64,000 nucleotides of DNA from Botryllus schlosseri. Its lineage: Eukaryota. Shown one piece after another: positions 3,103 through 27,400 of this stretch (positions are counted from its first letter, which is position 1; every line of letters starts with the position of its first letter). The DNA lies in contig CM119381.1 in the NCBI GenBank assembly GCA_051294905.1, positions 21,700,001 to 21,764,000 on the forward strand, read 5' to 3'. The notes under the pieces are model-generated. The model saw nothing but the letters and a program-made list of their open reading frames with translations. It made no database searches and was not told the DNA's origin. The position numbers were made by a program, and so were the translations under genes.

Positions 3103-3497
3103 TTAGAAAGTGGTGATAACGCAATAACTGTCTAGGGCCGACAAAATAATATATAAAAACCAGAAAGAAACGAAAATGAGACTGGAGATGACTTTGTACT
3201 TCCACGGCCCGCCCAGCTCCGCGCCTATCTTCTTCGACTTGCGTCTGATCACGAGGATCGCGATCGCCAGTACGGCCAGAATCGAGAATATCGTCACGGA
3301 GAACGCGAGGTTGCCGGGCTTGACGTGGAATTTTCTCTCCTCCGGTGTCCTGCCGGTGATGGCGTGATAGACGGCGGCGATGGTCCATGCGATGCCAATG
3401 CCGAGGAACACGTTGACAGCGTTGGAGCCAGTCACGTTGCCGATGGACGCGTCCGCGTACTGATCGCCGATAGCGGCTACTTTGCTAGCGAATGTAT
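3103..3497 (-). CDS. SLC8A: NCX last coding exon (DTFASK...ELGGP...YCVITTF*)
   Basis: Acceptor ttccag|AT at 3497 (phase 1); GSNAVNVFLGIG motif; TAA at 3105-3103. Confidence 0.96.
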
Positions 3498-6400
3498 CTG
3501 GAATATAGGGGCGGTTGTTGATTGCTAACGGCTGAAAAGGTCCCGGATTTTCGGCAGTGAATCTAGAATTGTTCACTGGAATCGGGTCCGCATTTTTCAA
3601 GTTCGTTTATGAGTTAATTTTATCGTTGCGAAAGTACTTGGACCTCGAAGGCACATTTCAGGTCGCAATCGGGTTGGAATGTCAAATATTAGTCCATAAA
3701 CCCGCTAACACAGTCCTCGTTTGCAATGTTTTTCTAAGTGTTTTGGGGGCCGCGAATTTCTCCAACGGTTTCCCAAAATTTGGACTTGCAACTATACAGT
3801 CAAGAAGTGATGGTTGTTTCTGGCTATGTCTTGTAGATAATGCGAATATATAGCCTACGATAGTTCACGCCCACAAAAAAGAATAAGTGGAGGTACAGCT
3901 TAACAGCTGAATCAAAGAGATATTCACAAAAGAAGTGCAACTTCGATACTCGCCAATGCTTATTTCTGATTTATGGCGCAGAAACATCAGTTATTACGTG
4001 TAGAAACGTAACAAGCGGAAGCCAACCAGCACACTTTGTTTGATTGTGCAGCAAACTTGTTTGGCGGCCGTGTTGGGCAGGTTGTTTGGTCGCTGTCACA
4101 ATCATTTAAGCTGTGCCTTGTCGAATAATTCAATTTATTTTGCGCTGATAGTACGTAATTTAAATAACTTCAGGTTTGTACCGCATTTTTAGAGATTAAA
4201 TTTTGTCGTAAAGTAACCTTTGAAATCCGAAATGACGTAATAATTGCTTTTCTCGCGAATCCTAGATTCGAGGTAATGATATTCTTTCTGGACTCTTCGC
4301 TGACTTAAACTGAATATTATGAAGCTTACGATGTCACAAACGTGTGGCTCTTTTTTGGTATTGAAATGAAACACTTGCAGTATCTTAAAACTACTTCGCG
4401 CTCACCCCAACGAAACCTTTAAAAAATCTGCTCATGTGTGAGTGTTGTTGGCCATTCGATTTCCAGATACATCGATTTGCTGTTGCTGTATGGCTATGCA
4501 AAATTGAGTATCTCGGAGATTCGATTCGGGGTCGAGTATTAAGCTTTGGGCCCAGTCGAGTAATCGAGCACCACCTATTATGGCGTGTTGACAGTGGACT
4601 AGGAATGCCCAGGAGGGTTCAATTGTGTCAAAATAATGTCAGCTGACAGCTACATGCCATGTAAAATAATTTCGTATCTCCTGAGCATGACTTTTTGGTG
4701 TCGCTGTCTGACAATTGTACCTGATTTATACCACGGTGTAAGTCTGGGGCATGTTCCGGTTTCGTGTAACACGGGTATATATTAACACCCGTATATCACG
4801 GGTGGTACAAAGGTGTGAATACGCACTTTTTAAACTGTGATATTCAATCGCTATTCGAGTATTAAGCTTGAAGCGAAGTTGAGTCGAGTTTTCGAGTATC
4901 AATTACTATGTTAGAAAAGCTCAAATAGGCAGCTTGCGACAAATAAGATATTCTCAGCTCTACTCCCGACGTGAAGACATAACAGTCGCCTAATCGTTAC
5001 AGAGAACCTGCCAGCCATGGGTGTAGCAAGCATGGAAATTTGATGATACGATTTTACGTCTCAATTACATTGTGACGGCGTTATATTAGAATTCACAGTT
5101 TGAGACTGACCGCAGCGCCTTACGACCCTGTCTGGCTGCGACAGCGGTCATCAATATTCATGTGCGATACGGCAAAATCCCAGAATTCAAATTGATTCAC
5201 AATCTACTGTAAAGGCGGTGCGAAACACGATGCGGCGGCCTACTCACCAGGTACGCTCGTTCCCATGGCAACCAGCGTAATAGCAGTGACGGCGTCGTTC
5301 AAGTCGATGGTGCATCCAAAGTGGGAAGCCACGTCGCCGATCACCGCGGTCAAGATGCCGATCACGATGATGGAGCAAGTGAAACACGCCCAGCCTCCGA
5401 AATAATCTGTGGGCGGCACGATCGCGAACAGCAGCTGTTGTCGGGATGTATAGTTTTAATTGCGCGTCCGTTAAAAAGGCTCGACTAGAAATATCGTTGC
5501 TAGAGCTGTAACTTATTACGGTATACTACGAACCCGCTAGTTAGGTCCCCATAAAACAGCTCGCAATGGAAGGACAGAGAGAGAGGGAGAGTCCTTATTT
5601 TTCATCAAACCAAAATGCAACAATGATGATATACAGCGGAAACGCATACACAGTATTCGGTATCGGATATAGCGGTGGTGGACATAACCTTATAGCTCAA
5701 CTAGTCCGATCACATCCGCATCGAACTATAGTACACATTGTCTTTACTTGATCTGGCTACACAAATTTAATCAGGGCCACAGTGTTGATATGTCGATAGG
5801 AGGTAATCAAATATAAATCGTTTTTAAATCTATCATACGGCACTAGGATCAGCGTGGATGCAAAATTAGTGCAGAGAGGTCTGCGGACACGAGTCAGATA
5901 GGAATTGGATTAGGAATTGCGATTCAGTGAAACGAGATATGAATTTATGATATATAATCTTGAATTTTTATGCCTCGGTTCGACGAGCTATGGTCGGAAC
6001 CGGATACGAGCTTGGATTCAAACAGGACACCAGATTTCAAGTTGACTTCAGATCCAGAAAAAGAAACAATCGCTAATTCCTGATACACGACAGAGAAACG
6101 GATTGGAACCTCATTCGAACGGATTTCATCCTTTAGGACAGACCAGAACCGGATCCCATTTGGAATTTGAAATGATCTTGAATAACAATCGCAGCCGGGA
6201 GTGAACTTGAATTTGTCAGCGACATTATCTTATGTATTCATTACTTCGCGTTGTGTCTATTGTATCTTGAGCGGATGAAAATAACATAACCGCCGATTAT
6301 GATTAACAAAACAATTGAGGAGTTTAATTTGAACTCCGACATAGGATTTGGATTTCCAAATGCGAAAATCCGTCTAGCTACGCTTACACGACAGCAGGAC

Positions 6401-9400
6401 GCGATGCCGACTTTTCATCAGGCATTTCATACTATATGTTAAAGACGCAAAATTGCGGCTCGCGTCTCAACACCCACAATCCCACAGTCGCGATTGCTTA
6501 TTACAAACTCTGACGGACGCTCCCGTAGTGCCGATCCCAAAGACTAACCCGTATAACCACAAAAGTGTCGAATATGGCTACGCGGGTGATTTGAAAGGGT
6601 TGAGTAATAGATTATACCTTCCAGAACACTGTGAGAAAATGCATGACATAGTCAAATCCGCTTGGAGCCGCTCTTCCACCGCCTTCATCCTCATCGTCGT
6701 CATCATCGTCACCTGGAAGAAATTTAGACTTGACTTGAGACAAAACCGGTAACAAATGGCGCAGCCGGAGCCGGTGCGGCAGGTTATTCCATTCGGAAAG
6801 CCAAATAAAACGGATGGGCAGTTTGGTGATGTTATTTGCCAGCGGGAGATTGGATTTCGCTAGAAGTGTCCGGTGTCATAAAATTGGCAATTGTCTCAGC
6901 CAAAATCTTCAGGGGGGTGGGTGATACCCTCGAATCGTTTTTTACGCCTCATCGTGGTGGATGTAAGCATGGACCTTACTCAGTACAGTGACGCGTGCGC
7001 TGCACACGCACATTCGCGACAGCGGCATTTTAAGTGCAGCAAGCATTCTGTTTCGGTAAGTCATTAAAAACTAACGAATCGATTGGGGAGTAAACATTGG
7101 AACCCAATCACATAAACTGCGATTAGATTCCGTTCATCTCCAGTTCTTGGCGCATATAAGTAGACCCGGATTAGACTCATACAGAGGTGATCAGAGACGG
7201 AGCACTTCTACTGTGTCGGATTATTTAAGTAGGAATTAGGTAGGTCATTATTTAAGTAGGAATTGTTATCCGTCACATAAAAGATATGTTGGTATTTTTT
7301 CGACCATACCGATTTTATTGCACTTAGTGACAATGTTGGCTTCGAAAATCTGCTAGTCCCAGCAACTTCGTAGCTTTCTACTATATGTTTCGTATGCTAA
7401 GATACGGCCGATCAAGGTTTCGAGGCTTCAACAGTGAAAATTACACTCGAAACTATAATTCTCGTGGATAAATTAACTTCTAGTGGCGAGGAGCGCATAA
7501 TTCCAGTACTCGAAAAAATCGACATTTACTACTCGACTCGAATGATCCCAATTAATACTCGATTCAGATTCGACTACTCGAATCATTATGCCCAGCCCTA
7601 ATGCTTACTCAAGCCGTTATTTCTTGGGCTGCTTCTACTTCTACTTAACATCGTTCACTTTTTAGGTAAAACTAGGGCTTTCCACTTGAGTAGGCTATAT
7701 ATGGCTACTTTGACCACTTTGGACTTATGCTAGATTGTTGGAACAACGTTTTTTGGACAGTTATAGAGTTGATTAGTAGAGAGCGTTCACCACGAACTGC
7801 ATATCCAACCCCTAATTTAAGCGATCCACAACGTATAAACTTTCACGTAGATATTGAGAGAGAGAGAAAAAATAGTATTCATCATCGCAAACAAAGAGAA
7901 AAATAACAGTCAGCCCGATTGGTATCTTTCATTACTTTTTTCGAATCCATCCACGCCACCACTGTAAAAGCCGGTTCGAATTTAAACCCGGCATCAAATC
8001 CCAGAGCGGCGCGACAAAAGCTATTCACTCAATCTAACGCAGAAACAAATCACCGATCTCATTCCCAGCGCGGTCACATTATCGATTCCAGCGGCGATCA
8101 GAAATGCAACGGGAAACCGCGATGACGATCGTTGCCATCAAGTCCCGAAGCGCGCGAACTGAACACGATACCAAGTGGGAAACTCAGTAAATTAATATCC
8201 CGCGACCTGCTAATTGCGACCGGAAATCGATCAATCACGTCTTTACTCGATAATGCAACCCCGACGAATTAGTTTGATTGTCGAGACAGCGCAAAAGTGC
8301 TGCAACACAATCGATAGGGATTACGGCGGACCGTTTTTATATCAGTCCCGAGTGGGCTATGACGAAATTTCCTTTTGCACTGTTACGCTGTAAATACATA
8401 GGCGGAAATAGGTGTATTCACGCGCCTACGTTCATACCTTCCTGCACATCTTATGTACATTGTACAAGCATTATTTGGATTAAAATGTTGTGTTTGATTG
8501 ATACCGTGGTGTAAGTCAGAGGTATAGGTTCGCGTACCTCGGATGTCTATGTACGTAACTCACGGCTGGTACACGGATTATATTTTGTTGAATCACCTTT
8601 TAGATTGTTTTAGAAGTGCTATATTAAAAGAGAATCCACTCCACGCCCGAGATTGATCTCCATAAGTAATGGTGTAAATATTCATAATCACTAATGCAAC
8701 TTTTTGTCAACTTTTGCAACTTTTTGCAGCAGCTTCCGGCAGATTTCTAAATACTCGAAAGTTATGTAGAATGGTGTTTTAAGCTGTAACAAGGAATATT
8801 ATATTGCAACTTTTCTCCATTTTTTCATGCAACTATTTTCAACTTTTTCGATTTATCGTGCAACTTTTTGCAAGTTTTTTTTCGATTTATCATACAACTA
8901 ACTTTTTACTGGAAATATATGGCACCATATATAAATAGATCGCTTGATTATTTCACTGTTTGAAGCAATTTCTGATTTAAGGTACATTCAGGCTAGACCG
9001 CCGAAAATTATATTTTGACTGGGTCAATTTTTTCGGGCTATTGATTTTGTTGAAGTCGCCAACACTGAGTTTTTCTACAGTGTCTTGCGTACGGATCGAT
9101 TTGAGTATCTCACACCCTAATAATTTCAAAGAACTTTTCCGTAAATGCAACTCTTTAGCGCAAATTTTGCGAAAAATAAATGCAACTTACCACGGTTTTG
9201 ACTGCAATAAAAACTTGCCCTAAGAATCACCCATTGGAATGGGTATGAAAGCAAAATTTTGAACCAAAAAGTGCTATATACCAAATTTGTGCCGGCTATG
9301 GAAGAAATCGGCGAAATAACCGATTTTCGTTTACAGTGTACGCGTGGCGTATGTTTACTGCCTCTTTGGCGTATTTTCGGGATAATACATGAAACCAGAA

Positions 9401-12400
9401 CCAGTCTCACAGCATGCATATGGTCTGAAAATGGGGGTATTGTGTCATGTACTGTACACCAACTAGTATGGGTGCTTTACCGCAAGTCTTATTTACACCC
9501 AATACCATGGTGAATACGAAAACCTGGAAAACCCGCTTCTTGCGTTTACACAAACTTTACAGGGAGGCGACACTACTCAGAAGTACACCAACCTTTACAG
9601 CCACCGAAACGAGGAAGTATTCTACACCAACGCATTGCTTACCTCCCTGCACGGATAGCGCGTCAATGAACTGCTCCCGCCACGAGGAGGTGCCGACGAT
9701 CACGGCCAGATTCGCTTTTTTGATCAGTTTATCGACGGTGCTCTGAATAGAAAGGACATGGGATACTTCGGTAATCTTCGATCGCTCCAATTCTCTGAGG
9801 TATCGCCGCGATTGGGGGAATACCAGGAGATCCGAAACGACTCAAAGCAGGTCAGGTTAAGAATTAGAAGCGAACGTGGTCACGGTGCGCGGGCCGTCTA
9901 TTGGTCTCGGATGCGGAGGTTGAAAAGGTCACGCATACGATTTCACGGATATATTGATTGCGTGGAGTCGGTTTTTTCCGACAGCGATTGAAGCCCTGAG
10001 TCTTCACGTTCGGGAGCAAAGGTCGCTAAATATTTTAGACAATTTACCGCGGTAGAATAAGCTTGTATTTGTAGTTCATTCGGACCGGATTTAGATACTT
10101 CAGCCGAAGTCGTATGCCTGGAGAGAAGCGGATGAAACCCCATGTCGATTGTGGGAGTAACGGGGGGTGCTTAACCCTTTGGAAGGCACCCAAACCCACA
10201 ATCATCATTCATCATACATGAATTCATCGAACCCTTCGCAGTAATCTTACCGCTGGCTAGAGGCTGCCCAAGTGCCCACGCAGTGCCCATAAATGATATC
10301 AAGTCTTAATATAAGTGATCTGCCACACTTATGGAATCGGTTATTTTGACAGAATGCAAGAGACACATATTGTCAACAAGTCATACCAACACTTTGCGGT
10401 ATTTGCAGGTAGGAACATCAATATCAATACTGTTAAAAATGTATTGCTCACAATCCAAATTAGAATACATCATGAGGAACTATAGTATCAATATTCAACA
10501 ACAGGCCATGAGCTATTTTAAGACGGTCAGGCCCAACAATTACCCGGCGATGAATTGCACAGTATCTCAAGTCACGAGAAAAAGTCGCACAGTACACTCA
10601 TCTCGAAACAGCACCACATTATCAGAAACAATGACTACAATCAAAAGACGCTTTGCCCAAACAATGCCCATGACAAAATGGGGGTAGCGATTTCGCTGAA
10701 CTTAAAAATCAAACTCCCGGGTTCACAGCGAAAACACCGTAATCTCGACATATGTCTCTGCGCTCTATGCCATTGTGACGCGCACAATTGACTAAAATTA
10801 TTTATCGAACGCGCGCTTCTCCCCGGAATTGGCGCTCCCGTTAGATTCAATCCGATGGTTCGCAACTGCCAATTCCGCTGCCATTGAAATTTGATGAGGG
10901 GTATTGATTTTTGAGGCCGCGCTAATGAAATAATGATAAGAAAATAAAAAACGATTCGGCCGCGAGTCTATTCCGAGCGCAACACGGTTATAAAGGGCAT
11001 TCTAGATCTATTTCTTCAGATAATAGATATTATACCACTCGGAGATACTGAAACACTGTAAGCCCGCGCCGTGTAATCGAGCTGTCCGATATTTACCAGA
11101 CCCATTGAAGAGGCGTAATCTTTGAACGTCCGACGCGGACCTTATCGAACTGAGATTTGAATAAATTATTGCTTTCCCCGGTATTACTCTCATGAATATT
11201 GTAAGCTTGGAAATAATGCGATGTGGGATCATAAAAAGTGAGGTTTGATTGCAACCCTGCGTGGCACTGTTGCTTGGTGTTGATACCGTGTTTAGCTGAT
11301 AGAAACACATTAAACGCATCAGGCCTGTTTTGTCAATATTATAGCCCAGTGGTTCCCAACGTGGGCGATTTGGCGGCCTAGGGGGGCGAAAATGACGAAG
11401 GGAGCGATAGGGGGCGAAAATGGACAAAGGGGGCGACAGGGGGCGAAAATAGCGAAGGGGGCCATGACGCGTCAAAACGGCTGACCTTTTTTTTTAGTCA
11501 ACTCACGGAAATTTAGTTGCAAAAGTGTCAAATTCGACATCGAACCGAAAAGTTGACTTTTTTTTTCAGTCAACCCGCCGGTGATTACAGTTTGTATGCC
11601 CATTTATCGGTACACAAAATTTGGGGGGCGATGATTGGTGTTGAGCTTGAAAAGGGGGCGATGGGTCGAAAAAGGTTGGGAACCACTGATAGCCTCATGA
11701 GGCTCGGAGCGGTCAAAATACTTACTGATGCCAGCTCATGATGAACACGTGATGCTGTGACATTCTACTCCAGTGCACGTCCAACGCAGGATTAAGTGCA
11801 CCAATTAGAAGCAAAAAAGTAAAGCTTGCTAAAGTATGGTTTATAATATGTTGTTACTCGCCAGAACCGGTACCCACAATAGTCGGCGTTAGAGATTGCC
11901 GGACTTCCCCAATCAACACACGCCACTTCATTTCCATCGCTTTTTCTTTCATGTTATCTCACGTTTCTTTTCATTCAATGCACATGCCTTATATTTACAT
12001 GATGTGGGTCAATGAAGTGCCTGATTGTAAGACTAAAACAAGTCGTTTCGACTCCTCTTATCATTTTATCGCAACCTTGTGATGTTTTGAACTGATTAAA
12101 TTACTTATAAACCGTACACCAATGTTCTGGTGTTTTGAAACGATGAAATATATAATAAACCGAACGGTACTGAACGTTCAAAATTGCAGGGTGCGTCTTC
12201 GCAAACGAGGCAGAATCGCTATTATCGCTGACGGTCAATGCAACTTTGAACTATACTCTATCGCCATGCAAGGGTTGTAAAGGCTATCGGTTGTGACGAT
12301 TTCAATCGCAAATATGGCCGATATCAACTTTCTACTCCGCAAAAATCAGGGGAAACGAGCAATTCAGCTTCAAAAACTGTATAAGTAGCAGTAGTTTACA

Positions 12401-15400
12401 GTCGAAGCCCCAAAAGTCGAGTCACTAGATTATTTATTGACCACATGCACCCGTACGCCCTACCTTGAACTCGTAGCTTTCCTCGATCACGATCGTCAAC
12501 TTGTTAATTTCTCCCAATCGCGGTTTGCCCAATTCGGCGATCCTTTTCGCCTCCTCGCGCTGTTCCAAAGTCAGCGTACTTTCCTCGTCCTCGTTGCCAA
12601 CCACCTCGGAATCGCTGCCAGTGTCGGTACCTGAACGACGCACATCGCCAGATGTCACCACAGAGTACAAATGATTAAGCTCGCAGTTCAGAAACGCGAG
12701 GAGTTGCTATGTTGTGGTACCGGTCAAGATTTGGCTGCGTGACTTCTTTACAAAAAAGGCAGCGAATTTGGAAGGGCATCACGCTATCACGTGGAGAGCG
12801 GCATATATTACTAAAAACATCTGTAATTGCCTACTATAAAATCAGTGATCAGATGGCGGAAAGAAATTCAGACTACGGCCACGCCCCTATTTTAAAACTG
12901 GCATGAGCACTGAGCAGTGCTATCCCTTTTGTAACATTTGCAGACGGTGCCGGTATACTTCACTTAAATCGAATTGTACAATAGTTGCTCTACTCAATAT
13001 ATACCGGACTATACACGTGGGATACCGAGTGGTTGTTACTCAAAGCCCTCGCAGTGTTAGTCCCATTATATAATGCAGCGGGGGTCGTTTGCCATGTTTT
13101 GCAGGTCGCCGAAGTTGTGACTATTTTATTAATAATCAGCTTCCCAAATAGCACCTAACCTTTTTTTAATGAGTAATCAACTTACCAAATTTGGCGGTAG
13201 GCTGTGGAACATTTTCAAATCGGAAATTGGGTCGAGACCGTGATAACGTTGACAACCACTGATCTAGTGGTTATCGTGTCATAACCGCTCAGTTTAGCTT
13301 CTACTCAAAATCATGCGATTCCAACGTGCCGTGGGTGACGGATAAAGTCATTAATAATGATTTAATCTCTCTACTTGACAAACAGCATCGCAGCCTTATG
13401 TGGTTATGGCTGTGCATGTACAAAGGTAACCAGGATATTCACGCCTTGGGCTAGGATACAAGACTAAGTCATGAACAGAAACAAATTACGGCCTCTCGCG
13501 ACAACTGTACAGTACACTAGATAGGGTGTGACATGGGCTGGTATTTTATACAGTAAAAATGAGGGCGAGACACACGGTTCCACGGTCTATATATCGAACA
13601 AGTACCAACAATACCACATGCAGCATGCACTTCTACCGGCACTACGCCACAAATCGATAAATTCGTACGATTCGCGGCTAAAGATTAGGTCTACGACCAA
13701 TGCCAAATCACGACGCATTCTGCATAAAAAAGCACGCGTGATCAGAACACGTGATATCAGGAATGTGCGTAAGGTACGCAAGGACACGGCCGTTTTCTGC
13801 CACACGTCGGTGGCGCGGCGTTCCGTTGTCCCTAACCCGTAGGTCGTAGACACCCCTCTATACGGCACGAAAGGGAACCTCCCGACACAAATTTATTGTC
13901 CATGGGATGTGAAGCGAAACAGAGACACACGCCGGAAATTGCGATCCAATAAATGCACAATCAAATATGTTCATGACGCAATACTAATTAGTCTGTCGAA
14001 GAGGATTTCGACTGCACGAAACCTTTTCGGCTATACAGTCAACATCATCCGTCTGAATCACTCCGTTTCGTGGTGTATTACGTAGGAATATCTACACGTG
14101 CCGGTGCTATATAAATGTGTTGAATGGAATGAGTGTGGGTGGTGCAGATAAGGGGGAAACGTGGGTGGTCTTGGTTATAAGCACTGGTACGGCTTCAGGT
14201 GCGGAAATGGTTGTGTGAAAGTTCGGTTAGCCACGTGAAGAAAATGTTCACGATATACGCTAGTTTAAATGGCGGAAAACAAATGGATTGAAGAGCCTAC
14301 ACTACACCGTTTCTCAGGCGATTTGAGTATAAAGTAGAAGGCTGCTGGTGCTGGTACACACGACAGGTAGTGCGAACAAGGCCACTCAAGTTATGCAAGT
14401 AGAGTAAAGCTAGACAGTCAAAGTACTGCAATGCTTCCTTATATTGACCACCGCGGGGATCTAATTCAAGAGATCGTGGTCACGTCACTTAACGCACACA
14501 GCGCGAGCCACGTAGGTGGATGTATACCTTAATTTACCACCTGAATGAGGGTATCTCCTCGGCGACACTTCGTGCGGTTCCATGAGGTGTAACGACAGAT
14601 TCCGGCGTTTGTAATACTTCATCGTATCACACACGGATATTTGGATTTGCTTCCTGATGATCACGCCACGAACAACATGCAAGCACCACACCAAAATCCA
14701 CATGAAAAACAGAACACGGCAACGCGTTTAGTGAGCTACGGTTGCATGCCGGCCGGTTCCTTTGCCAATGTGTTCGGTGTGCGTTGATAAAGGTACGCAA
14801 CAGCTGAAATGGATGTACGGGCGATTGATGTGGGCGGAAAGGGAGAATAATATATTGAGGACACGATATACCGTGTTGTTTTTAGGTTAAGCCTAGGCTT
14901 GCGTTCTGCCGTCGTCTTTCGAGCCGTTTTGCTAGCTTAACGCCATTCACCTCAACGTTACAGAGTTTGGCCGATGGAACTATCTAACATTCAGATTCCG
15001 AATTCAAAGCCACGTGAAAGAACAGACGATGATCAATTTGCGAGTTCTCAGCAGTATTTTCAACGCAACACTTGATAACCCATATTGCACCGCAAATCCT
15101 TATCATAGAAATTCAAAACGAATAGATTAGTGTTGCCGTCAACATTATCTTCAGCAGCACCATACATATTTAGTTAATGATGTCAACCCCTACCGATGTA
15201 TCGCATAGCAGACTTCAAGCCCCGTGATGTCACGCGTATTCTGCAGATTCTAATTTTAAGCCGGCGGTGATGCGCAAGAATCTTAATCCTAGTGTTGACA
15301 AATTGAAATGCCCGAATAATAAATAGCAGCGACCACAGGGGCGTGGTTACGAAACCGGAACCGCATCGTGTATAATCGATTGTTTGTCCAGATTTCCCGA

Positions 15401-18400
15401 CGAGCTGTAAACATTGTAATGGTGATGTTGTACGTAGGGCAGAATACGACGAGCGGTATCGCAGACAGCAATCACACACAACCCGATATCGATTTTCCGT
15501 GGGTGTATTTGTGACTTGCAGCGAATCGTTCGTCCCGAAGACACCATGCATAAACGTTGTTTACCGCGATCGATTTGGTCCGATTTTCAGCCCGAAAACT
15601 ATACAGTATCAACGGAATTACCGGATTTCCGCTGTAAATTATACAATATATCCCCGTATGATTGTGGGGGAGATCAGCAAAATCAGCCTGTAAGAAATTA
15701 ATGATTACGAATCTATTTTTGTAGTGGCGGCATCTCCGTACCCAATCACGAGGTTAACACTACGCTATAATTCACGCTACAGCAATCCAAGCCGGCACAT
15801 ATAATCCCGCACGGCAATCATGTTACGAATACGATCCGTTCTTGGACACGTCATTCCGCGACACAACAATCGATGGTGTACATGCTCCACAATGCAAAAC
15901 ATATCTACAGGGAAAACCCAGGCACGCATTCCAAACTGAACCTGAATCGGTGGCGGGCGACTTCATAAACTTAGGCGGGCCGAGTTCTAAAAAGAAGCTC
16001 TTGTTTTTCTCGTACTCTTCGTCGTCCATAATTTCGATTCGAATTTCCTTCCTGAATTCGGACAGTAACGAAAAGGGTGAGGCAACCGATCACAACCCGA
16101 AGGCGAGTGAATGCCAAACTTCTGAAATCATTCTGCAGTCGCTACAGATCCCCGCCATACCGGGGTGCAACCCGCAGGCCTCCCATCGATGGAAATCATT
16201 ATAATGTTAAATCAAATCTCAACCACCAGTTAGTGATACATTCACGCTGATGTAAATATTGCTGAGGATAATTTTAAGTACATTGTACAGTAGGGCTGTT
16301 CAAAAATAACGCTTTTTCCCGGATTCCTGCCATTCACTGATTAAATTGTCAGGTTACCCTAAAAAACGCTGCACACCAAATTTGGTTCAATTATAACAAG
16401 TATAGGACTCCGCAGACCCAATTAAAAATTTTAATTTATTACAGAAAATTTGAAAAAAAAAATCAACTTTTTCTGCCAACCCCATGAAATTGTAGAGCTG
16501 TCTTCAAAGACGATGCAAAACAAATTTGACTCAATTCCAACCAGTAGAAGTTATTTCAGTTTTTCGTTGATAATCCTCGGATTATCCTTGATTTAATTTT
16601 CTGTAATAAATTAAAATTTTTAATTGGATCTGCGGAGTCCTATACTTGTTAGAATTGAACCAAATTTGGTGTGCAGCGTTTTTTTAGGGTAACCTGACAA
16701 TTCAGTCAGTGAATGGCTGGAATCCGGGAAAAAAAGTTATTTTTGAACAGCCCTATTGTACAGTGGCGACTAGCCGGCTCCACCAAGTCTACTAAAGTGG
16801 TTGATAATTATACTCATGAAGTAAATAGATGTCATGAATTGAAATGTTTTCCATCAAACTCAAAAGCCGAGTCACTAAACTGGCGGACCGGATTCCGAAT
16901 GAGGACCTTACCTCTGTCAGTATTTACTTAGTTTCTGAACAAAACTAAATCCATTATTGTCGATTTGCAAAAACATACTGCCAAAAATGCCAATTTCCTC
17001 CACGACCTGCGACTTACAGAACTGTAAATGCATTTCGCTTATTGCTTTTGCTAATGTCGTTTTACGCGGATTTATTTCATACAGTTATACCCTATTAAAT
17101 TTGTATGACTGTAAATTATTTTATGTGAGTTATAACCTACTTGAGCAAATTTTAAACTTTTGTAACTGGACCTTTGCTCAGAATACTTCGGTAGGTCTGC
17201 GTTAAAGGGAGCAAAATACTAATACTAATGCTAATACTAATACTAATACTCTACTAATACGTGCAAAATCCTGTCTGTGATTAGCCGATTCCATGGAGCT
17301 TTAGGAAAGACATATTAGGGTGTGAACGCAATTGCACATACAAATATTTACACATTGTAAACGCGCCGTTCATCGATAGTAGCGTATTAGGACCAGTGTA
17401 TTGTTAACGAAAAATAGACGACGCCAAAACATCGCCTTAGCGAGACCAACATCAAAGCGAAGGCTGGCCTTGCAGCGAACCATGTTTGAAGCGCCGCGCG
17501 GGTCGATAGTAATGGAATGACGGTACGGATCGATACAAACAAAGCGTAGTAGCCACTGTCACAAAGCACGGGGCTAAGGAATTTGATGAAACCAAATAAA
17601 GGACAAGAATTTTGTTATTCCAAAACGCCAGGAGATCAGACGAAACTACCAGGCCAGTCGTGTCCTGCTATAGATAGTGTATCATTACCGACAACGCGGG
17701 CTACGTTCTTTTATCTACAGTGAATAATGAATATCCATCCAGATGTTGTGGGCTTCCTACAGCGTCCCAGAAACACATAGCTTTAGCGTAAAGTGCTCAA
17801 GTTCGTCAATTAGCCATGCCTCTGGCTGAATATTTGTCAGAATCAAACGCGTCACAAACACTTCGAAAAACACTGCGCAAATGAACCCAGGCCGGGCCCA
17901 GGTCAATTCGATTAATCTTGCTACAACGCAGCGCACGATTAACCGAACTTACATGTCGCGTACAACGTCATGTCTAATATCCAAACGATCTGTATACGTC
18001 GCGGCGCTACGCGTGTACGTGTTGACGGCTAATTTACATTTCATTATCGACGCAGACGGTTACGGTTAGCGTTGCGGGTTATCCCGTCGGATCAATTAAT
18101 CGTCGATGGAATTCATCTGATCAATTATTACCTGCACGCCTTGGCCTTTAGGGACAAACAGAAATCACAGATTCACGGATAATTATATAACTGAAGGCCT
18201 GCCGTTGAACTACGCGAGGAAGATTGGGTGTATTCGTATTTCAAAGGGAAATCGGAAGTCTGACTTCGCACCGGCATCATATTCAACTTTAACCCCAGCG
18301 AGAACAATGAAAGTTCTTCGAAACGCACCACGGGAAGTCGATATATGTGGAAATTTATACCCGCTCTTACGAAATCTCTAATCCAAAATTGGAGTGCAGT

Positions 18401-21400
18401 GATCGCCTTCGCATTTGCTGAATTCAAGCCGAGACACGAAGTTGCGATCCGCACTGCCCAAAAGTCTCCGAAATCCATCCCGTTGTGAGCGGCGAAATAT
18501 ATACGGCATACGCGCTATTGCGTGTGATTGTCGCCGACGGTGCATTTACGAACTTATTTACGCGGCGGGCGGGGATAATTCACGCATAAGGTCAAAATCA
18601 GCTCAGCTGCGGTGAGGTGTCGCGTCGCATTCCAGCCTACTAGCAAATAAAACGGAGCGTATATTTACGTTATGCGCTGTCACATCGGATATCTCCGATT
18701 GGTTGACGCTAGCACACCGTGCCTGGTTGCCTTCACGTCGACGACAATGGAGATTAACCTCTGCACTTTGTAGACGATATCGGATTATCGCTACCCGGAA
18801 TAGCGTAACTTGAAGATACGAAGCGATTTCATAAACTAACAATAGGATATCACCGTCGCGCTGAAGTATTGTGTCCGCGACACGCATGCGCGACTGGGCC
18901 TTGAACCAGGACGCCGTTAAATGCCCTGAACTTGAAGGTAGTAAATATAGACGCGCAGAATATGTAAGCTTGGCAAGTGGCGCATCAACAAGCTGTTGCA
19001 ATGCGGTGAATAATAGACAACCGGTGCCTACGATAACTTATTAGTAGGGCGAATATTTTTGTCAAAAAACGGCAGGGTTAGGTCAAAAATATCGTCAAAA
19101 TTGCTTACAAAGTCATATTTTTTGTCGGTGCATTCGCCATTTTACATTTACACGTTCTAGTCTACTTTATATGGCTACTGTTGCAGATGGCCCATTGACT
19201 ACTCAATACTCATTGTGAATCATAAACCATCATACGTTGACATGTCGTGACGATCAGCACACCTAAAACGAGTGAAATTTTAGTTGGTCCAAAGTTTTTA
19301 CAAGCTAACGCCGATATCTTAAATCTGAATCTTAAACTTGACTGTGGTGGACATTGGTTCTGATACCACAGTGGTGCTCAACTTGTGGGTGGATCGTGAG
19401 ATGTTAACAAAACTCAGGTTTGGGCTGCGGTCAGAAAAGTGCTAGGTCAACAATTCCACATTATGTGCAACAATGCCTAATTTAGATACTTCAGACGAAA
19501 ATAATGTCAAAATTAAGATTATAGATGTCCAAATTTTCATTTTTATTGCAGAATTTTCCGTGTTTAGGTCAAAAAATAATCGCCCTGCTTATCATTAATC
19601 ATAGCTAGTTATCGTAGGCCCCGATACACCTAAAACCATGCACGTGTCGTACTTTGTTGCCGCAGAAAGATCATCCGGTCAGTTTCTGATTAAATCAAAT
19701 CCGTGCAATCTTGGTAACGTTCATGGAGATATTTTTATCGCAACAAAAACACCTTGACTAACGCACGCCGGTGCCGCAAAGCGAAACCAGCTCGTATAAT
19801 GCAACCGCACGCACTATATTCGCGAGTGAAATTACACTATACATCGCACGGTTTGAATGATGGCTTAGTGTCTGCTCAAAATACTTTATCTCGCCGTAAG
19901 CGCATTCTTCTTTACCAATCAAAGAAATCCACAACTCTTTCAAAGCTACGGTGTTTCTTCCATGGAGATCATGCCCATCGGCTATGCACCAAACGTATTT
20001 CGAAGATACATTGGAGACGTTCTACCGTGACATGTTGAAACAACATTGTGAATTTCGCCATTATGCACCGCCAAGGACGCTGGGGACGCATCGGCTGGTT
20101 ATATCTACATCGTCACAGTACGCCCCATCCCCAGTAAAACGTAACCACATGTCGCAATGGTAGCGCGATTGTACAAACGCAAGCGTCGGTAATACCCTAA
20201 TTACATTACACGCCACAGAAGTGGTTACCATATCCGCGGAGCTTGTACGCGACCTTGAGTTGCTAATGTTATCTTAAAATAAACTCAGCGGATAAGTCTC
20301 TGCGGAGTTCCGTGACCAGGCGGCCTCGTGTCAACGGACGACGTGGACTAATACTAGTCAGATATTATATCAGTGTCATTACGGTACTTAATACCTCGAA
20401 TTAGAGTATATTACCCGACAGCTGGACTATAAAAAACCACGCAGCAACGTAGCCTATAAAAAGCGTTCGGCGAAAGCAATGACGCCAGACTAAAATAACG
20501 AAGTTCAAAGGTTAGATCATCAGTCGTCTTCCCGGTATTCCCGTAGATTAAGGGTTAAACTATGACCAAATCAGATGCAGATAAGGCCTCTGATTAGAGA
20601 ACGAATTGCTCCGAGATGAGAATGATATTCCCTAGTATATGTGATCCCGCGTGACGTGAACGCGTTAATATTCATGTCCAAACCACTGCAAATGATAAGC
20701 ATCACATAGGGCCGAGGATTTAAGTCCTCACTGTGAACTGTTTTGACCCATTCAAGGTAGTTTCAGTTAAGCCCGTCACGTAGGTTACAATTTTACAGCC
20801 GGTTTATGTTGATAAAAAGAAAAACAGGCCTTTCAGTAGCTCGACATCACCGTAAACTTCGAGACGATAACAAGATAAGAGCGGCAAAAGGGCATGGCGG
20901 CATTCCAGCGCAAACTGACGCACACTGTCGTAAGCGAGGCATCATTGCCAGTTCCGGATCATTTAATTACATGGATGTAATCCTCGAACCATCATACAAC
21001 GCTTCGTCTATCTGGATTTGCTGCGTGTGACAGTTTTGGTACAGCTCAAAAGCCGGTTTAATATGGTGACGCATGCTGGCTTGGCATTCTCTGATTATTG
21101 CGGCGAGATTTCGAACAAGTTATCAATCTTTATACTAGAGTCCGACCGATTATCGGTTCGCCGATAATATCGAGTCGATATCACACTCTGAAAGAATTAT
21201 CGGTATCGGCCATCGGAGGTGAAAAATATCGACAATTTTCGTGACGTCACAACATGTTGGTAGGAATTCAGAAAACTCTAATCCTTGACCGCCAGACAGA
21301 GAATATTGCTGCATTTTACTTTCAAGGTGTCCATATGCAGTATTTCTAATTTATTTCATGTTCGAGTATGACAATGGCTGTAAAGCTGTTGAAATAAATG

Positions 21401-24400
21401 CTGTGCAGTTTTGAAAATGTGCCCACCGGTGTTATCGGTGAAGGTGTTAGGCATCGGTTTTATCGGTATCGACTCCAAAATCCAATATCGGCCGGGCCCT
21501 AACTAGTAACTGGCAGATTTTGCATGAGTATATGCGAATGGAGTGGTTCGACTGTGACGTCGCGACGATTATGCGGCTAATTTGTAATCATGGGAGATAG
21601 CTCCATCATATGCTCGATGCTGTGTAGACTAGCAAAATCATACACTTGTACGTCGTAGCCATAAGGCAAAATCGTAATTTAGCGCACTAAATCCATAACA
21701 AGTGCTAGTGCATATTATTAAGCGCAACCGTCAACAGTGTATAGTTGAAATGACTTGAGGAATTGATACTCCGTACCAATTGGGTCAATAGTAACGCATC
21801 AAGCGTAGCACGACAAGCACCTGTCCAAATTAATGCGCCGTAACATACGGTACGCCTACTTCAGAATGCTACTTCACCTCAAATTGTTTAGGTGCGTGAT
21901 TTTGATGTCAATATGCTGAATTTAATTAATCCCCTTCGCTTCGCGATGACATGTAGATATATGATAAAAGAAGCGTAATTGAACTAGAATAAATTGATGA
22001 GGGCACAGACTACTACTACACGGGCAAGCGCCAAATTAACAGCATTTGATCAGGCTCGCAATTTTGATATTATTTCCGTTTATGATTTTGACAGTTTTTC
22101 CGCGTATACGTTTGTGAATTTCTCCGTTCGTAATTTAGATATGTGTACTTATACATCAAACTCCAAGATCCCATGCAATGAGCACCGCGCGAGATGCACG
22201 ATTACAGCAGCAACGAACCGCCGCAGACGCAAACGTATTCTTTATAATGACGACGCAAATATTCCTGTGCAACCGCAGTGACAAGGCCCGCCAGAGGCAC
22301 ATCTGTCCTCTCGAAAAAGGCATACTGCACAAACGGATCAATTCTTCGCGGCAGCGCGCGTGAAGGCGGCTGACAACGGCGCAGGGAGCGACCGCTGTCT
22401 CCAGGGACGGCGATGGAATCCGAATTCGTAAAACGAAATTTCACGGCGCGTGTCGCCGGCGGCCGGTCCAGCCATTGACAGCAAGTCGATTGCTGCGATA
22501 TTATCGGGTTCGAAAAACGGCAACTGGGGATTATTTGCGTGTCAGTTCGTGAAGGTAATCGGACAGTTAGACGTAAGCGGTGCATCAATAGGGTGGAGTG
22601 AAAAATGAAAATTTTTGAATTTCAGAAAAGGGTCTTGATATGTGGTGCCAAATAGTAAACAAATAAATTCTATCATAATTTTGGGTTTGTACACCCTCTA
22701 GTGGTCGTGCAATTTCACCGAACGAGCCAAAAACAGCTAATTTTGCCATATCTTGATCATCACTTACACTAGAAAGTCAGTTTTGGGCTTAAAAGATGCA
22801 GAAGCAACATGTTTCTATCTCACTTCCATAGAACTTACTCTTAAAAATGAACAGAAAAAAAGTTATAGGCAAATTTCTGATTTTATAGGTAAAATTAAGC
22901 ACAGAAGCAGTGGGTAGGATGTCAAAAGAGTGTAGTGATTGATCTTATGACTGAGCAACATACCCTATCAATTAGAACCACTTTTCAAAACTTTCTCAAA
23001 CAAATGAAACCCCCTACAAGCATAAATAGGGCTTGGGCATTGAATAGAGACTGCTAAAACTGTATTTAAAACATCGTCTATTGGTAGTGCGGCATCACAA
23101 TATCGGTAAGTTTGTAACAACGGCCCTCATGAGATTTCTTACCAAAATGCTGTCATAGGGTTTGTATCATATTTGTCACAAAGCTCCTGAATGAAAGCGC
23201 AAGAATTGAAAATACACATTCAAAACACAAACATCAATTCTATACTGGAAACAGAAAATTTTTGTTGCAGTATCACATGAGTATCAGTGTGCACAAACAA
23301 TAAAGTCATGTTTAGTATTGAATGATTTCATCTGCTTTCAAGACTTCAGTTTTGGATTAAACACCTCGTGACGCTGTTGCAATTACGCCGCAATATTACG
23401 AGACGCCAGTCGGTCGTTGCCGACAATTTGTGGTTCCTCAATTGAAATTCGCCGAACTACCCTTCCTTACACCAAGTATTCTGGTAAATAATCACTGAGT
23501 TTAATCGCAGTTATAGGCTCATATTGTCAACTCGCCACTCCCTTTTTATATTTATGTACCCAGTCCCCAAGGTAATACAAAGTTGGGGCACCATGTAGAT
23601 TAGGTGATTATAACCAGCGCGCAATATAAAAGTAAAAAGGTAATTCATAAACACCACTAGCAGTCATGGCGATTACTTTTCAAGACATACGACAAGTATA
23701 GCCAATCATCTTTGGTCCAGTATCTGCAAATCATTTGTTCACGACGGTGAACTGGTAAAGGATGTTATGAACTGAGCAGGCTGTTACTTGGAAAGTCCCA
23801 AGAAAGCTTGATTTAGATGTGTTGTTGCTGTTGTACAAGGTCGTAACCACGAGTCGTAGAAAATAAAGTGAGACTTTTGACGACTAATTTGGAGATCTGT
23901 CAAGCGTATTCTATATCAAATCGTTGCCATAAAAGACCCATAATATGCTTTATTGAACAACATTGCCATCGATTGGCTGGGTTTGGGTACTTAGAACACA
24001 TTTAATACATATACCAAGATAAGATAGTCCATTATGTGGTTTTTATACATACATGCGTCATATGAGATCAATCACGTATTCACTGTACCGACTTACATTG
24101 TTTCATCATTTCCGAATTCTAGTTCTCCGAAGGCATCGACGTAGTCCTCTCCACCGCCGTTGGCAGTGTTCGCGACGGTTTTGTAGGGAACGACCACGCA
24201 ACCTCTCGCGCCTGAGTCGCGTTTCACCGGTACTGAAAGTACCCCTATGCTTTCGCTGACCTGTTGAAATAATAACAAAATGACTCCGCAATCTCCGAGG
24301 ACCGAGTTCGCCGTCAAGCCCCTAAAACCTGTAAAGGGTGGATTTGAAGATCTTTGTCGGATTCCAACATGTAATTCGGAACGAGAACGAATGCTAATGC

Positions 24401-27400
24401 GACTTTTGAACAAATTCCAGTCGCTGTTATGAACTAGCATTTTTCTGCGATAGTAATCAATAGTTTGACCTGCTGATAACGATTCCGTGTCTCACTGACA
24501 CACTGACAAGACGTAACATCTGACGGTAACTCACAATGTGTGTAGGCTGTAAGTAGGTGTTGTGCATGACGTTGAAACTTTAATTATACTTTACTGGACG
24601 CATAGTCCATTAGTTTCATGACTGTACGGCTGGCTTGAAGCGTGGCTTACGAGATGAACAGCCCCACCATATCATGCGTGATATTCCTTATGAGTGATCC
24701 AACATCGCGATGGTAAAATCGTGCGATTACCGTATGCGTTCGTTTTTCGAAATTTTGCATGCATCCATTTATGACAATCGACACTTACAGAACTATGAAA
24801 GTGACAGTAAAGCAAAGGTATCGATCAGAGTTTACGAACCCAAACTTTCTACTCGAACGCGCAGTATACTTTCATGCCAAGATGCGTCATCGGATCAACG
24901 CCGAAACTATTTTGGAGGGTTTAGTTTCAAAATATGTGAGAAATGAAATTGTACTAGCATACTATGTCGGGCTAAGTGAAATCAAATACGCTGCTCATGG
25001 TTACTACGGAAATCTGAAACTACAACTGTCCAAGCACCATATTATTTTACGTCCCATGCTGCGACAAGGTAATAATCATGAGTTCTTTCCAATAAGGATA
25101 ATGCACTCTGGGCAAAATAAATTTTCAGCTTACGCCATCGAGTATAGTTGCCTGCCTGTATGCAAATCGGCATAAAATGAAATATTTACTAGTGATCGGC
25201 GAACGACATACAATTATATGATGTTTACTGTTTTCAGCCGGTTTATCGACAGTTTTTAAATTTATTTAGAGCATTCACTGATGCATGCACCAGGCGTCGC
25301 AGATGAGGATTGCATACAAGGATTGCATTGAATGCCGAATCGCTATGCTATATGCAGTAAGTTATGCACGGTGATTTAGACTGAGCAATGACCATGCTAG
25401 TGAGACCGCATGGTGCTGCAAAGAATGTGAACGTAAAATTGATTGACCGTGGACAAAATACATCCCAGATAGCCAGTTGGTCTTTAGTTGGCTGTCTTGT
25501 TTACGTATTATGGACGCAATCACTGGTGTAGCCACAGCGCGAGCAAAAATCCCTCACCGCCCCAAATAATATATTTCGGACATGAGAGGGTCATGTTCGG
25601 CTGTTGCATAACGGTGTATCCGTGATGTGATTGAATTGCTACAGAATTATTTCTGCTGGCCGCACCCTTCGACACAATATGTCCAGTCCACAAGCACACA
25701 TACACACACCGTGCACGCAATCTAAATTGGGAGTCGGTTGGATGCAATCGGTACCATGTCATCCAACGCCGCAAAATATACCATGCATTATATACCATGT
25801 GCCAAATCTATACCTGGAGTGTGTTCAGTGTGTACAGACACACAATAATAAAAATTCCGACACGTGTGGAGAGGCCGTTTACGAAACAACGCATACATGC
25901 CACTTTACCAACCAAATAACGCACGGATGTAGTATGCTACGAACCAACATCATTGATGAGGAGAGGCGAAATGGTCGTAAAATTAGTGGAGCACTTCAGC
26001 GTGTTTGTTCTACGTTGGGCGTACGTGAGAGTTCGGAATAGATTTTAGTGTGTTCAGATCCCGTCTCTATCGCTTCCAGTATATAGCTATAGCTAGGCTA
26101 CTTCGAAAGAAATCATATTTGGTGAGCGAGCTGTTCCAAGTATTTCCAGGTTACTCGAAACCATTATTATTCAAGTGTACGAAAAACCGCATTTGGAGTG
26201 ATGCGTGCCTGCCCGCTCTGAAATAAACGTTATATGTAGTCAACACCATGACAGATTGCATCTCCGCAAGTTCTTCCATACGAAAACCGGCACGACGGCG
26301 TTGGGTTTGGGCAGAAAGATACTTTTATCAATATACATTTCACCTTCGTTATGTGAAACGTGCCTCAATCGTTTGGCATTCTTTTCACTGCCTATAAATA
26401 CGCAAATCTTGACTCTATTAACGATAATGCGCGGTTGATACGGAACACGGAACATAACATTACACAAGTATATCTGTGACATTCAACGAAAAAAAAATTA
26501 GGCAAATAACATCTGATATGGTCTTTTATCATTTCCCTTAAACTTATTTGTGTTCAAAAGATGAATGTGCAGACTGCTGATTATTTAGTTTCGCATTGCA
26601 CAATCATAGAGCTGTATATAGTTTATTAAACGTTTAGTACCAACGACTGGGCCCGAATTTTGTAAGAGTTGTAATTGAACGCGGGCCAATATTTTCACAA
26701 TGATGAAGTGACGCACGGCATCGAACGGCATAAAACGTTCCAGAAATTGTTCACAACGAAGCGATCAAACAATGTTTACAACGCATAACAGTCACACGAG
26801 CTATTATACGGAGCAGCGCACACATCCACAATAGCACGTACAATAAGATATCAATCTCTTTTGTATTGTCAGGATAAGGTAAGGTATATTCCTTGTATAA
26901 ACACAGATAAATTGCGTGCCTACTATTTTCGTCCGCTTGGAACCTGATGCAGAGACACAATGGAATGCCGACGCATTGCGTCGGCTACGGTGTCGGCGGC
27001 GCGGCCTACAGTAGCAGAGTGATTCTCATCTCGACTAATTGGATCACAGACTGCTGATGAATGTAGTTCGTATGTTGCTCGCGGTTTACCGAGATTGAGA
27101 TAAAACCGGCGACGCAAATGTGGCATTTGTGTGCTGTACAACGCAGCGTGATTTTCCACTGAAAGTCTTCGGGCTTGACGCAAGGCACTGCGACCAATCA
27201 ATAACCGTGACGCTCAATTGCGCGTGCATCGGCGTTGTGCGATTGATTGAAAATACTGATTTACTGCTGCCGTGGTGCCTTTGGCACGGACGTGCAATTG
27301 AACGATTATCTGCCGATATGGAGTATCCCATGCGGGTCACATTGAATCGTACTGCGGCCAGATGGTGCGGGGAATGGTTTGCATTGAACGGGTAGAATCG

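What the first reader, a model, noticed from the sequence alone, without database searches (positions are those of the whole stretch)
14541..16051. Hidden mutually exclusive CBD2 exon pair: a Ca2+-binding A exon and a B-like exon with the acidic ligands erased
Seen: exon 14653-14541 (KQIQISVCDTMKYYKRRNLSLHLMEP) aligns without gaps to 16051-15942 (KEIRIEIMDDEEYEKNKSFFLELGPP). Both begin ag|G AAG (phase 2) and end TCA G|gt (phase 1), so including both shifts the frame. Established: vertebrate NCX1/NCX3 use exons A/B at this position, and in NCX1 exon B removes CBD2 Ca2+ binding through D578R and K585C. Here DDEEYE becomes DTMKYY, a different and more complete loss that makes the segment basic. 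Inference: an invertebrate NCX Ca2+-sensor switch that either predates vertebrates or arose independently.
Basis: partly seen in the sequence, partly recalled or inferred. Interest (0 to 1): 0.78.

Follow-up and report, generated by a model that had tools for sequence, protein, structure and literature searches.

The report
Sea-squirt NCX alternative calcium-sensor exons
A sea-squirt sodium/calcium exchanger gene really does splice in one of two look-alike exons, one keeping and one lacking the acidic residues that bind calcium in the second sensor domain, which is a tunicate counterpart of the well-known vertebrate NCX1 exon A/B switch rather than a new kind of system.

Summary
Observation confirmed. 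On the minus strand, 16051-15942 (110 nt) and 14653-14541 (113 nt) are homologous tandem exons of a vertebrate-type NCX (SLC8) gene. Public RNA data show each one spliced to the same upstream exon (ending 24097) and the same downstream exon (starting 12630). No A-to-B joint was seen. Taking both exons, or neither, breaks the frame.

The genome is an ascidian. Its second NCX gene is 75% identical to a Styela clava protein.

Exon A matches vertebrate exon A (DDEEYEKNK). Exon B reads DTMKYYKRR: Asp578 becomes Thr, Lys585 becomes Arg, and three Glu are lost.

B-like exons with the same acceptor position, the same phase and the same loss of acidic residues occur in four other unnamed, probably tunicate, NCX genes. 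The five form one clade (99/97). So the exon is old and under selection, not noise.

Loss of CBD2 Ca2+ binding is inferred from NCX1 exon B; it was not measured. Whether tunicate B shares its origin with vertebrate B cannot be resolved from 26 residues.

A 2022 supplementary table already dates the SLC8A1 event to "Chordata", so this is a new, better documented member of a known kind.

The parts
3106..33063 (-). Vertebrate-type Na+/Ca2+ exchanger (NCX/SLC8) gene. The span is approximate, from the start codon to the last coding exon.
   Evidence: ORF pieces. tblastn with vertebrate NCX1 proteins finds the exons in order. Pfam Na_Ca_ex, Na_Ca_ex_C and Calx-beta all score above their cut-offs. 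Only the exons listed below were bounded with RNA.
24097..24263 (-). Constant exon for the first half of CBD2. It carries the Ca2+ ligand positions E516 (VSESIG) and D552 (GGGED). Its donor lies after 24097 (AAT|gtaagt).
   Evidence: Calx-beta E 3.8e-13. The 3' end is confirmed by the loose ends at 14653 and 16051. The 5' end rests on homology only.
15942..16051 (-). Exon A, 110 nt: KEIRIEIMDDEEYEKNKSFFLELGPPKFMKSPATDS. It keeps D578, E579, E580, E582 and K585.
   Evidence: It matches NCX1 CBD2 exon A in PDB chains 3us9/8sgi/2fwu, E down to 2e-11. Joint 12630|15942 stands in X9, X3 and X7, and the loose end at 16051 runs into the 24097 exon.
14541..14653 (-). Exon B-like, 113 nt: KQIQISVCDTMKYYKRRNLSLHLMEPHEVSPRRYPHS. 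T578, M579, K580, Y582 and R585. The net charge of residues 577-585 goes from -3 (exon A) to +3.
   Evidence: It is the best non-self match to exon A in the window. Joint 12630|14541 stands in X9, X3 and X7. The loose end at 14653 runs into the 24097 exon in X24 raw reads, X3 and X7. It occurs once in the genome. Homologous exons are found in L002, L006, L009 and L013.
12464..12630 (-). Constant exon, 167 nt, for the end of the FG loop and the last strand of CBD2 (..RIAELGKPRLGEINKLTIVIEESYEFK). It carries the E648 ligand position.
   Evidence: Both ends are seen in RNA. The joints are at 12630, and the loose end at 12464 reads on into STVDKLIKK of the next exon.

Best explanation
This is a regulated, mutually exclusive pair of tandem-duplicated exons in the second Ca2+-binding domain (CBD2) of an ascidian vertebrate-type NCX gene.

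Each mRNA takes exon A or exon B between the constant exons that end at 24097 and begin at 12630. Both exons are 2 mod 3 in length, so mRNAs with both or with neither run into early stop codons. Only single-exon forms are productive.

The exon encodes two beta strands and the loop between them. In NCX1 that loop supplies Asp578, the neighbouring glutamates and Lys585 of the CBD2 Ca2+ sites.

Exon A keeps all of these, and the constant exons keep E516, D552 and E648. The A isoform should therefore sense Ca2+ at CBD2 as NCX1-A does.

Exon B keeps the strand pattern (I.I.V.D...Y.K...L.L..P) but replaces four of the five acidic residues and Lys585. The B isoform should have a folded CBD2 without a Ca2+ site and be regulated by CBD1 alone. 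By analogy with NCX1 exon B, it would lack Ca2+-dependent relief of Na+-dependent inactivation.

Shown here: the exons, their splicing, their exclusivity in the contigs, their use at a substantial level, and their conservation. Inferred: the loss of Ca2+ binding and its physiological effect.
For: Sequence and phases.

Similarity beyond chance.

RNA: both joints to 12630 stand in three runs, and the same upstream sequence sits at both acceptors. X7 contigs of 160 and 157 nt read upstream-B-downstream and upstream-A-downstream. Junction depths put B at about 33%, 43% and 29% of A+B in X9, X3 and X7.

Sample-dependent use: within study P4, X11 holds B words only while X20 and X21 hold A words only. 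Within P3, X8 and X13 hold B only and X9 holds both.

Single genomic copy, so the joints do not come from a retrocopy.

Conservation:
- L002 shares the MSH2-NCX synteny and has A (110 nt) and B (98 nt).
- L006/7/8 have A (113 nt) and B (101 nt).
- L013 has A (107 nt) and B (107 nt).
- L009 has B (101 nt).
- All have AG at the same codon and an in-phase GT, and all lengths are 2 mod 3.
- Position 578 is T/T/N/S/T and position 585 is R/A/G/A/S in the five B exons.
- The five B exons form one clade, 99/97.

Ligand rule: in NCX1, exon B's R578 and C585 prevent Ca2+ binding to CBD2 and abolish the Ca2+-dependent relief of Na+-induced inactivation (PMC9820601 section 5.2).
Against: No Ca2+-binding or transport data exist for either isoform.

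The B loop is basic, not merely neutral. It could mimic the Ca2+-bound charge state instead of the empty one, or it could bind something else.

X9, X3 and X7 are RNA only by the tool's guess. Their exon-only depth and spliced joints argue that they are RNA. Contigs show presence, not absence, so both exclusivity and the reciprocal sample pattern rest on few k-mers and few reads. X24 gave only 8 laid reads.

The relatives are unnamed assemblies. That they are tunicates is inferred from a rooted tree (94/93) and from a shared GSDSGING motif, not from labels.
Confidence: 0.72

Rival explanations
1. Same splicing switch, but the effect of exon B is the opposite of, or different from, that of NCX1 exon B. 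The basic loop (KYYKRR) neutralises the acidic pocket left by E516, D552 and E648. It thereby mimics the Ca2+-bound state, giving a constitutively relieved exchanger. Alternatively, it creates a site for another ligand such as an acidic lipid or a protein partner.
For: Net charge of residues 577-585 changes from -3 to +3 in the window. It is 0 to +2 in the other four B exons. Lys/Arg at 580, 583 and 584 recur: K at 583 in all five, R at 584 in four. The review describes K585 salt-bridging D552/E648 in apo-CBD2, so basic side chains can occupy that pocket.
Against: L013's B loop (DTSSYCKNS) is uncharged overall. The conserved feature is therefore loss of acids rather than gain of bases. In NCX1, R578 does not give a Ca2+-independent active form according to the review.
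Confidence: 0.2
2. Exon B is a decaying duplicate or an unproductive exon whose inclusion is splicing noise or only lowers the output of the gene.
For: No protein-level evidence exists. The 37-residue peptide found nothing among 1.84 billion cluster representatives or in the PDB. Its splice sites are not strong.
Against: Inclusion is in frame. B makes up 29-43% of junction depth in three runs, and in X24 depth over exon B (2.03) exceeds that over exon A (0.49). Frame, acceptor position, phase and a DxxxY.K core are kept in five diverged genes that form one clade. The blank is expected, because isoforms collapse into one 50% cluster.
Confidence: 0.04
3. On origin (independent of function): the tunicate B exon arose by a separate duplication of exon A within tunicates. 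It is only convergent with vertebrate exon B, as has been proposed for Drosophila Calx.
For: Vertebrate B exons of NCX2 and NCX3 keep the acidic cluster (DDEEYEK, DEEEYER; Table 2 of PMC2408596), so the ancestral vertebrate B was acidic. The vertebrate B tail motif W-x-(R/K)-R-G is absent from all tunicate B exons. Related genes L010/L011 and L014 have A only. Table S5 of PMC9741552 scores Calx as 'same region, convergent'.
Against: The exon order (A then B) is the same as in vertebrates. Holding all B exons together costs only 3.0 log-likelihood units (p-AU 0.34), and holding tunicate A+B together costs 4.8 (p-AU 0.19), so neither is rejected. PMC9741552 Table S2 dates the SLC8A1 event to at least Chordata.
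Confidence: 0.5

Closest known systems
[quoted passage not shown]
   Same: The position in the protein is the same: the exon starts at residue 569. The order is the same (A upstream of B). The pair is used exclusively. Exon A is 60-70% identical, with DDEEYEKNK intact. Exon B changes positions 578 and 585, the two positions that abolish CBD2 Ca2+ binding in NCX1.3.
   Different: NCX1-B changes only D578R and K585C and keeps EEYE. The ascidian B also loses E579, E580 and E582 and has no W-x-RRG tail. No cassette exons C-F were looked for or seen between B and the next exon. Orthology of the two B exons is unresolved.
Vertebrate NCX3 (SLC8A3) exons A and B
   Same: A mutually exclusive pair at the same place that sets the number of CBD2 Ca2+ sites.
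   Different: In NCX3 the polarity is reversed: exon B (E585) gives three Ca2+ sites and exon A gives none. Both exons stay acidic.
Drosophila CALX1.1 / CALX1.2
   Same: An invertebrate NCX with alternative splicing inside CBD2. It is scored as a tandem-duplicated exon event in the 'same region, convergent' column.
   Different: The CALX variants differ in five residues of the FG loop. CALX CBD2 binds no Ca2+ in either form. Here the switch is in the Ca2+-binding loop itself.

Membership tests
NCX / SLC8 Na+/Ca2+ exchangers | Two Na_Ca_ex membrane repeats flanking a cytoplasmic loop with two Calx-beta domains | tested here: met
   Pfam Na_Ca_ex (E 3e-22 and 3e-17), Na_Ca_ex_C (3e-41) and Calx-beta (2e-25 and 4e-13) on window exons. 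The exons are collinear with vertebrate NCX1.
NCX / SLC8 Na+/Ca2+ exchangers | Membership of the vertebrate-type branch rather than the general invertebrate-type branch | tested here: met
   In a first-exon tree rooted with invertebrate-type NCX, the window groups with vertebrate NCX1-4 at 100/100. The invertebrate-type set includes this genome's own second gene family.
NCX exon A/B mutually exclusive splicing system | Two tandem homologous exons at the CBD2 strand-loop-strand starting at residue 569 | tested here: met
NCX exon A/B mutually exclusive splicing system | Transcripts carry one exon or the other, never both | tested here: met
   Contigs upstream-A-downstream and upstream-B-downstream were found, with no A|B joint in 4 runs. 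A+B or neither gives a premature stop. Contigs can miss rare forms.
NCX exon A/B mutually exclusive splicing system | The exons differ at the positions that set CBD2 Ca2+ binding (578, 585) | tested here: met
   A has D578 and K585. B has T578 and R585. In the relatives, B has T/N/S/T at 578 and A/G/A/S at 585.
NCX exon A/B mutually exclusive splicing system | The isoforms differ in CBD2 Ca2+ binding and in Ca2+ relief of Na+-dependent inactivation | not testable with these tools
   Needs binding assays and giant-patch recording.
NCX exon A/B mutually exclusive splicing system | Exon B is orthologous to vertebrate exon B (one duplication before the tunicate-vertebrate split) | tested here: inconclusive
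   The tree has 26 columns. Tunicate B is one clade (99/97). All-B monophyly has p-AU 0.34 and tunicate A+B monophyly has p-AU 0.19.
NCX exon A/B mutually exclusive splicing system | Tissue- or cell-type-specific choice of exon | tested here: inconclusive
   There are reciprocal holders of A-only and B-only words within studies P3 and P4. Samples are coded, only 7-9 words are sampled, and absence in contigs is weak evidence.

The most novel reading that the evidence does not exclude
The A/B switch arose once, before tunicates and vertebrates split, with an acidic, Ca2+-binding B exon. Tunicates then erased the site in B. NCX1 disabled its own B independently by D578R/K585C. In one tunicate lineage that has two vertebrate-type NCX paralogues at equal coverage, the two exon types may have been parcelled out to separate genes: L014 has A only, and L009 has a B-like exon with no A within 5 kb.
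Probability: 0.3. Interest if true: 0.55.

Novelty: new member of a known kind. Interest (0 to 1): 0.4.

Why it matters
NCX regulation by CBD2 is understood almost only from mammalian splice variants and from Drosophila CALX. A tunicate gene that toggles between a canonical CBD2 Ca2+ site and a loop with nearly all ligands removed is a natural on/off pair for testing what CBD2 Ca2+ binding contributes. It sits in the sister group of vertebrates, with a single vertebrate-type NCX gene. It also shows that turning the CBD2 sensor off by exon choice was reached by different substitutions in tunicates and in NCX1. Finally, it corrects the 2008 view that the A/B duplication is a vertebrate novelty, if the exons prove orthologous. 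The kind of system is well known, so the gain is comparative, not conceptual.

Tried and rejected
- Exon B against the PDB: no NCX hit, not even NCX1 CBD2-B (2klt). The exon is too diverged for a pairwise search.
- Exon B (37 aa) against 1.84 billion cluster representatives: 0 hits. This is uninformative, because isoforms share one 50% cluster and short exons are rarely called as genes.
- First-exon anchors P0004, P0009 and P0012: introns are too long, and 10 kb flanks reached only CBD1.
- Walking upstream of L009: no exon A within 5 kb before the contig end.
- Walking downstream in L021: exon A was found, but B and the next exon lie beyond the locus. Look-ups were then exhausted.
- Search for competing RNA pairings (docking and selector elements) around the exons in the window and in L002: only 14-16 nt chance-level inverted repeats, none shared. 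Frame and NMD are the only exclusivity mechanisms supported.
- Accession numbers of the relatives' samples in the paper library and in earlier scan notes: nothing, so the relatives remain unnamed.
- Papers on ascidian NCX splice variants: none found.
- Structure prediction of CBD2-A and CBD2-B was not run. The spliced sequences have no reference and would have had to be typed.
- A processed retrocopy as the source of the joints was rejected: exon B and exon A each occur once in the genome.
Full report
**What is in the sequence**

The window carries, on its minus strand, a multi-exon Na+/Ca2+ exchanger gene running from about 33063 to about 3106.
- Its pieces match Pfam Na_Ca_ex, Na_Ca_ex_C and Calx-beta above the curated cut-offs.
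- They lie collinear with vertebrate NCX1 proteins.
- An MSH2-like gene lies upstream.

- 16051-15942 is 110 nt and encodes KEIRIEIMDDEEYEKNKSFFLELGPPKFMKSPATDS.
- 14653-14541 is 113 nt and encodes KQIQISVCDTMKYYKRRNLSLHLMEPHEVSPRRYPHS.
- Both begin cag|G AAG and end TCA G|gt.

**Is the similarity more than chance?**

I scanned every stop-free 26-residue window in all six frames with the core of exon A.
- Exon B scores 44.
- The homologous strand of CBD1 scores 34.
- The best unrelated segment scores 23 (mean -27, sd 10.7).

Exon A matches exon A of NCX1 CBD2 in solved structures, with E down to 2e-11. Exon B on its own finds no NCX chain.

**Is it spliced?**

I laid one raw RNA-seq run (X24) and the contigs of three small runs (X9, X3, X7) on 12300-16300.
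- Two joints stand in all three contig sets: 12630|14541 and 12630|15942. Both have GT..AG on the minus strand.
- Loose ends at 14653 (four raw reads of X24, plus X3 and X7) and at 16051 (X9, X3, X7) carry the same letters. Their reverse complement is the end of the constant exon at 24097 (..EFGNDETM).
- X7 holds one contig that reads upstream-B-downstream (160 nt) and one that reads upstream-A-downstream (157 nt).
- No A-to-B joint was reported.
- Junction depths put B at about 33%, 43% and 29% of the two forms in X9, X3 and X7.
- In X24, depth over exon B (2.03) exceeded that over exon A (0.49), on very few reads.

Each exon occurs once in the 495.5-Mb assembly, so the joints do not come from a retrocopy.

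Translation shows that A alone or B alone is in frame. A+B stops inside B, and skipping both stops in the next exon. I found no convincing RNA pairing that could enforce exclusivity. Frame plus surveillance is the only supported mechanism.

**Sample dependence**

I searched the run index with exon B and then with exon A. The holders are reciprocal within studies.
- In study P4, X11 holds B words and none of A, while X20 and X21 hold A and none of B.
- In study P3, X8 and X13 hold B only, and X9 holds both.

This fits regulated choice. It rests on 7-9 sampled words and on contigs, which show presence better than absence.

**Which organism**

Earlier notes of this scan call the genome a stolidobranch sea squirt. 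I checked this with a second, intronless NCX gene found in the same genome (G000:C8).
- Its 825-residue product is 75% identical to a Styela clava protein.
- It is 62% identical to Clavelina and Ciona proteins.

The genome is therefore an ascidian near the styelids. That second gene belongs to the general invertebrate-type NCX branch. The window gene belongs, at 100/100, to the branch that holds vertebrate NCX1-4.

**Conservation**

Short ORFs covering the exon after the pair served as anchors. I fetched the DNA around relatives and scanned it.

| Locus | Source | Exon A | Exon B |
|---|---|---|---|
| L002 | Logan SRR10746996; MSH2 lies upstream of NCX as in the window; first exon 71% identical | 110 nt | 98 nt, KYIEITISDTTKYYKRAKFLVSLEEPYVPGSI |
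| L006/7/8 | unnamed | 113 nt | 101 nt, TLISVPIVDNHSYYKRGKFRIELGQP.. |
| L013 | unnamed | 107 nt | 107 nt, KWITIPIVDTSSYCKNSSFKLSLLEP.. |
| L009 | unnamed | none within 5 kb upstream, where the contig ends | 101 nt, KSICVKVVDSNKYHKRATFSIVLGEP.. |

- Every B exon has AG at the homologous codon and an in-phase GT. Every length is 2 mod 3.
- In all five B exons Asp577, Tyr581 and Lys583 stay.
- Position 578 is T/T/N/S/T and position 585 is R/A/G/A/S.
- The five B exons form one clade (99/97).
- Two related genes, L010/L011 from a Tara Oceans metagenome and L014, have exon A only, less than 1 kb from the next exon.

- A first-exon tree rooted with invertebrate-type NCX places 13 unnamed genes as sister to the window clade and away from vertebrates (94/93). 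They are probably tunicates.
- L014 lies on the same contig as one of those 13 genes (P0011).
- Of the loci with a B exon, only L002 (P0003, in the window clade) is placed in that tree.
- L006, L009 and L013 are grouped with the window only by the shared B exon and a GSDSGING motif in the next exon.

**What the switch should do**

By the alignment to NCX1, the exon starts at residue 569.
- Exon A supplies D578, E579, E580, E582 and K585.
- The constant exons keep E516, D552 and E648.

In NCX1, exon B's R578 and C585 prevent Ca2+ binding to CBD2. They also abolish the Ca2+-dependent relief of Na+-induced inactivation (PMC9820601, section 5.2).

The ascidian exon B removes D578 and K585 and three glutamates besides, while keeping the alternating hydrophobic pattern of the two strands. 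The most likely reading is a folded CBD2 without a Ca2+ site, which leaves regulation to CBD1. This step is inference. The loop is basic in four of the five species, so a Ca2+-mimicking or ligand-binding role cannot be excluded.

**Origin**

On et al. (PMC2408596) placed the A/B duplication in a basal vertebrate. They counted Ciona only as having one NCX gene.

Martinez-Gomez et al. (PMC9741552) list the SLC8A1 tandem-exon event with an age of at least "Chordata". They list Drosophila Calx as "same region, convergent". They give no sequences or comment.

My 26-column tree rejects neither hypothesis: all B exons together has p-AU 0.34, and tunicate A+B together has p-AU 0.19.

Vertebrate NCX2 and NCX3 B exons are still acidic. 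Whatever the origin of the exon, the erasure of ligands in tunicates and the D578R/K585C change in NCX1 are therefore independent events.

**Verdict**

- The thing is a well-documented new member of a known kind of switch. The functional consequence is inferred, and the question of origin is open but testable.
- I found no paper that describes tunicate NCX splice forms.
- I could not check whether the exon is annotated in this genome.

Noticed in passing
G000:C8:4292878-4295352 (L019:3878-6352, + strand): A second NCX gene with an uninterrupted 825-codon frame, apparently intronless. It belongs to the general invertebrate-type NCX branch and is 75% identical to a Styela clava protein. Its CBD2 loop reads IVNDHKTEKDESF where echinoderm and other invertebrate relatives read IIDDQEYEKDESF, so it too has lost acidic residues.
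   Followed up: partly
window 54377-63939 (- strand); L002:94-4131: An MSH2-like mismatch-repair gene lies directly upstream of the NCX gene. The same MutS-NCX order is kept in the related Logan contig L002.
   Followed up: partly
window 14353-14568 and 14539-14970: In run X9 the intron flanks on both sides of exon B are covered by contigs at depth 42.7 and 21.2. That is far above other intron parts (0-6) and above the spliced B junction (13.3). Possible causes are local intron retention, an alternative end just past exon B (read-through would add 18 codons and stop), or an internal start. It remains unexplained.
   Followed up: no
L014 and L009 (both ERZ25067576); L003 and L021 (both ERZ25067590): Two distinct vertebrate-type NCX genes sit at near-equal coverage in the same assemblies (31x/38x and 32x/35x), so one probable tunicate lineage has two paralogues. 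One (L014) has exon A only. L009 has a B-like exon with no A within 5 kb. This may be subfunctionalisation of the exon pair into genes.
   Followed up: partly
L010:9143-9277 and L011:2263-2397: A very AT-rich (23% GC) planktonic relative from a Tara Oceans metagenome has exon A only. Its exon border is shifted, so that the SDTDSG stretch, encoded in the following exon in the window, is part of exon A.
   Followed up: no
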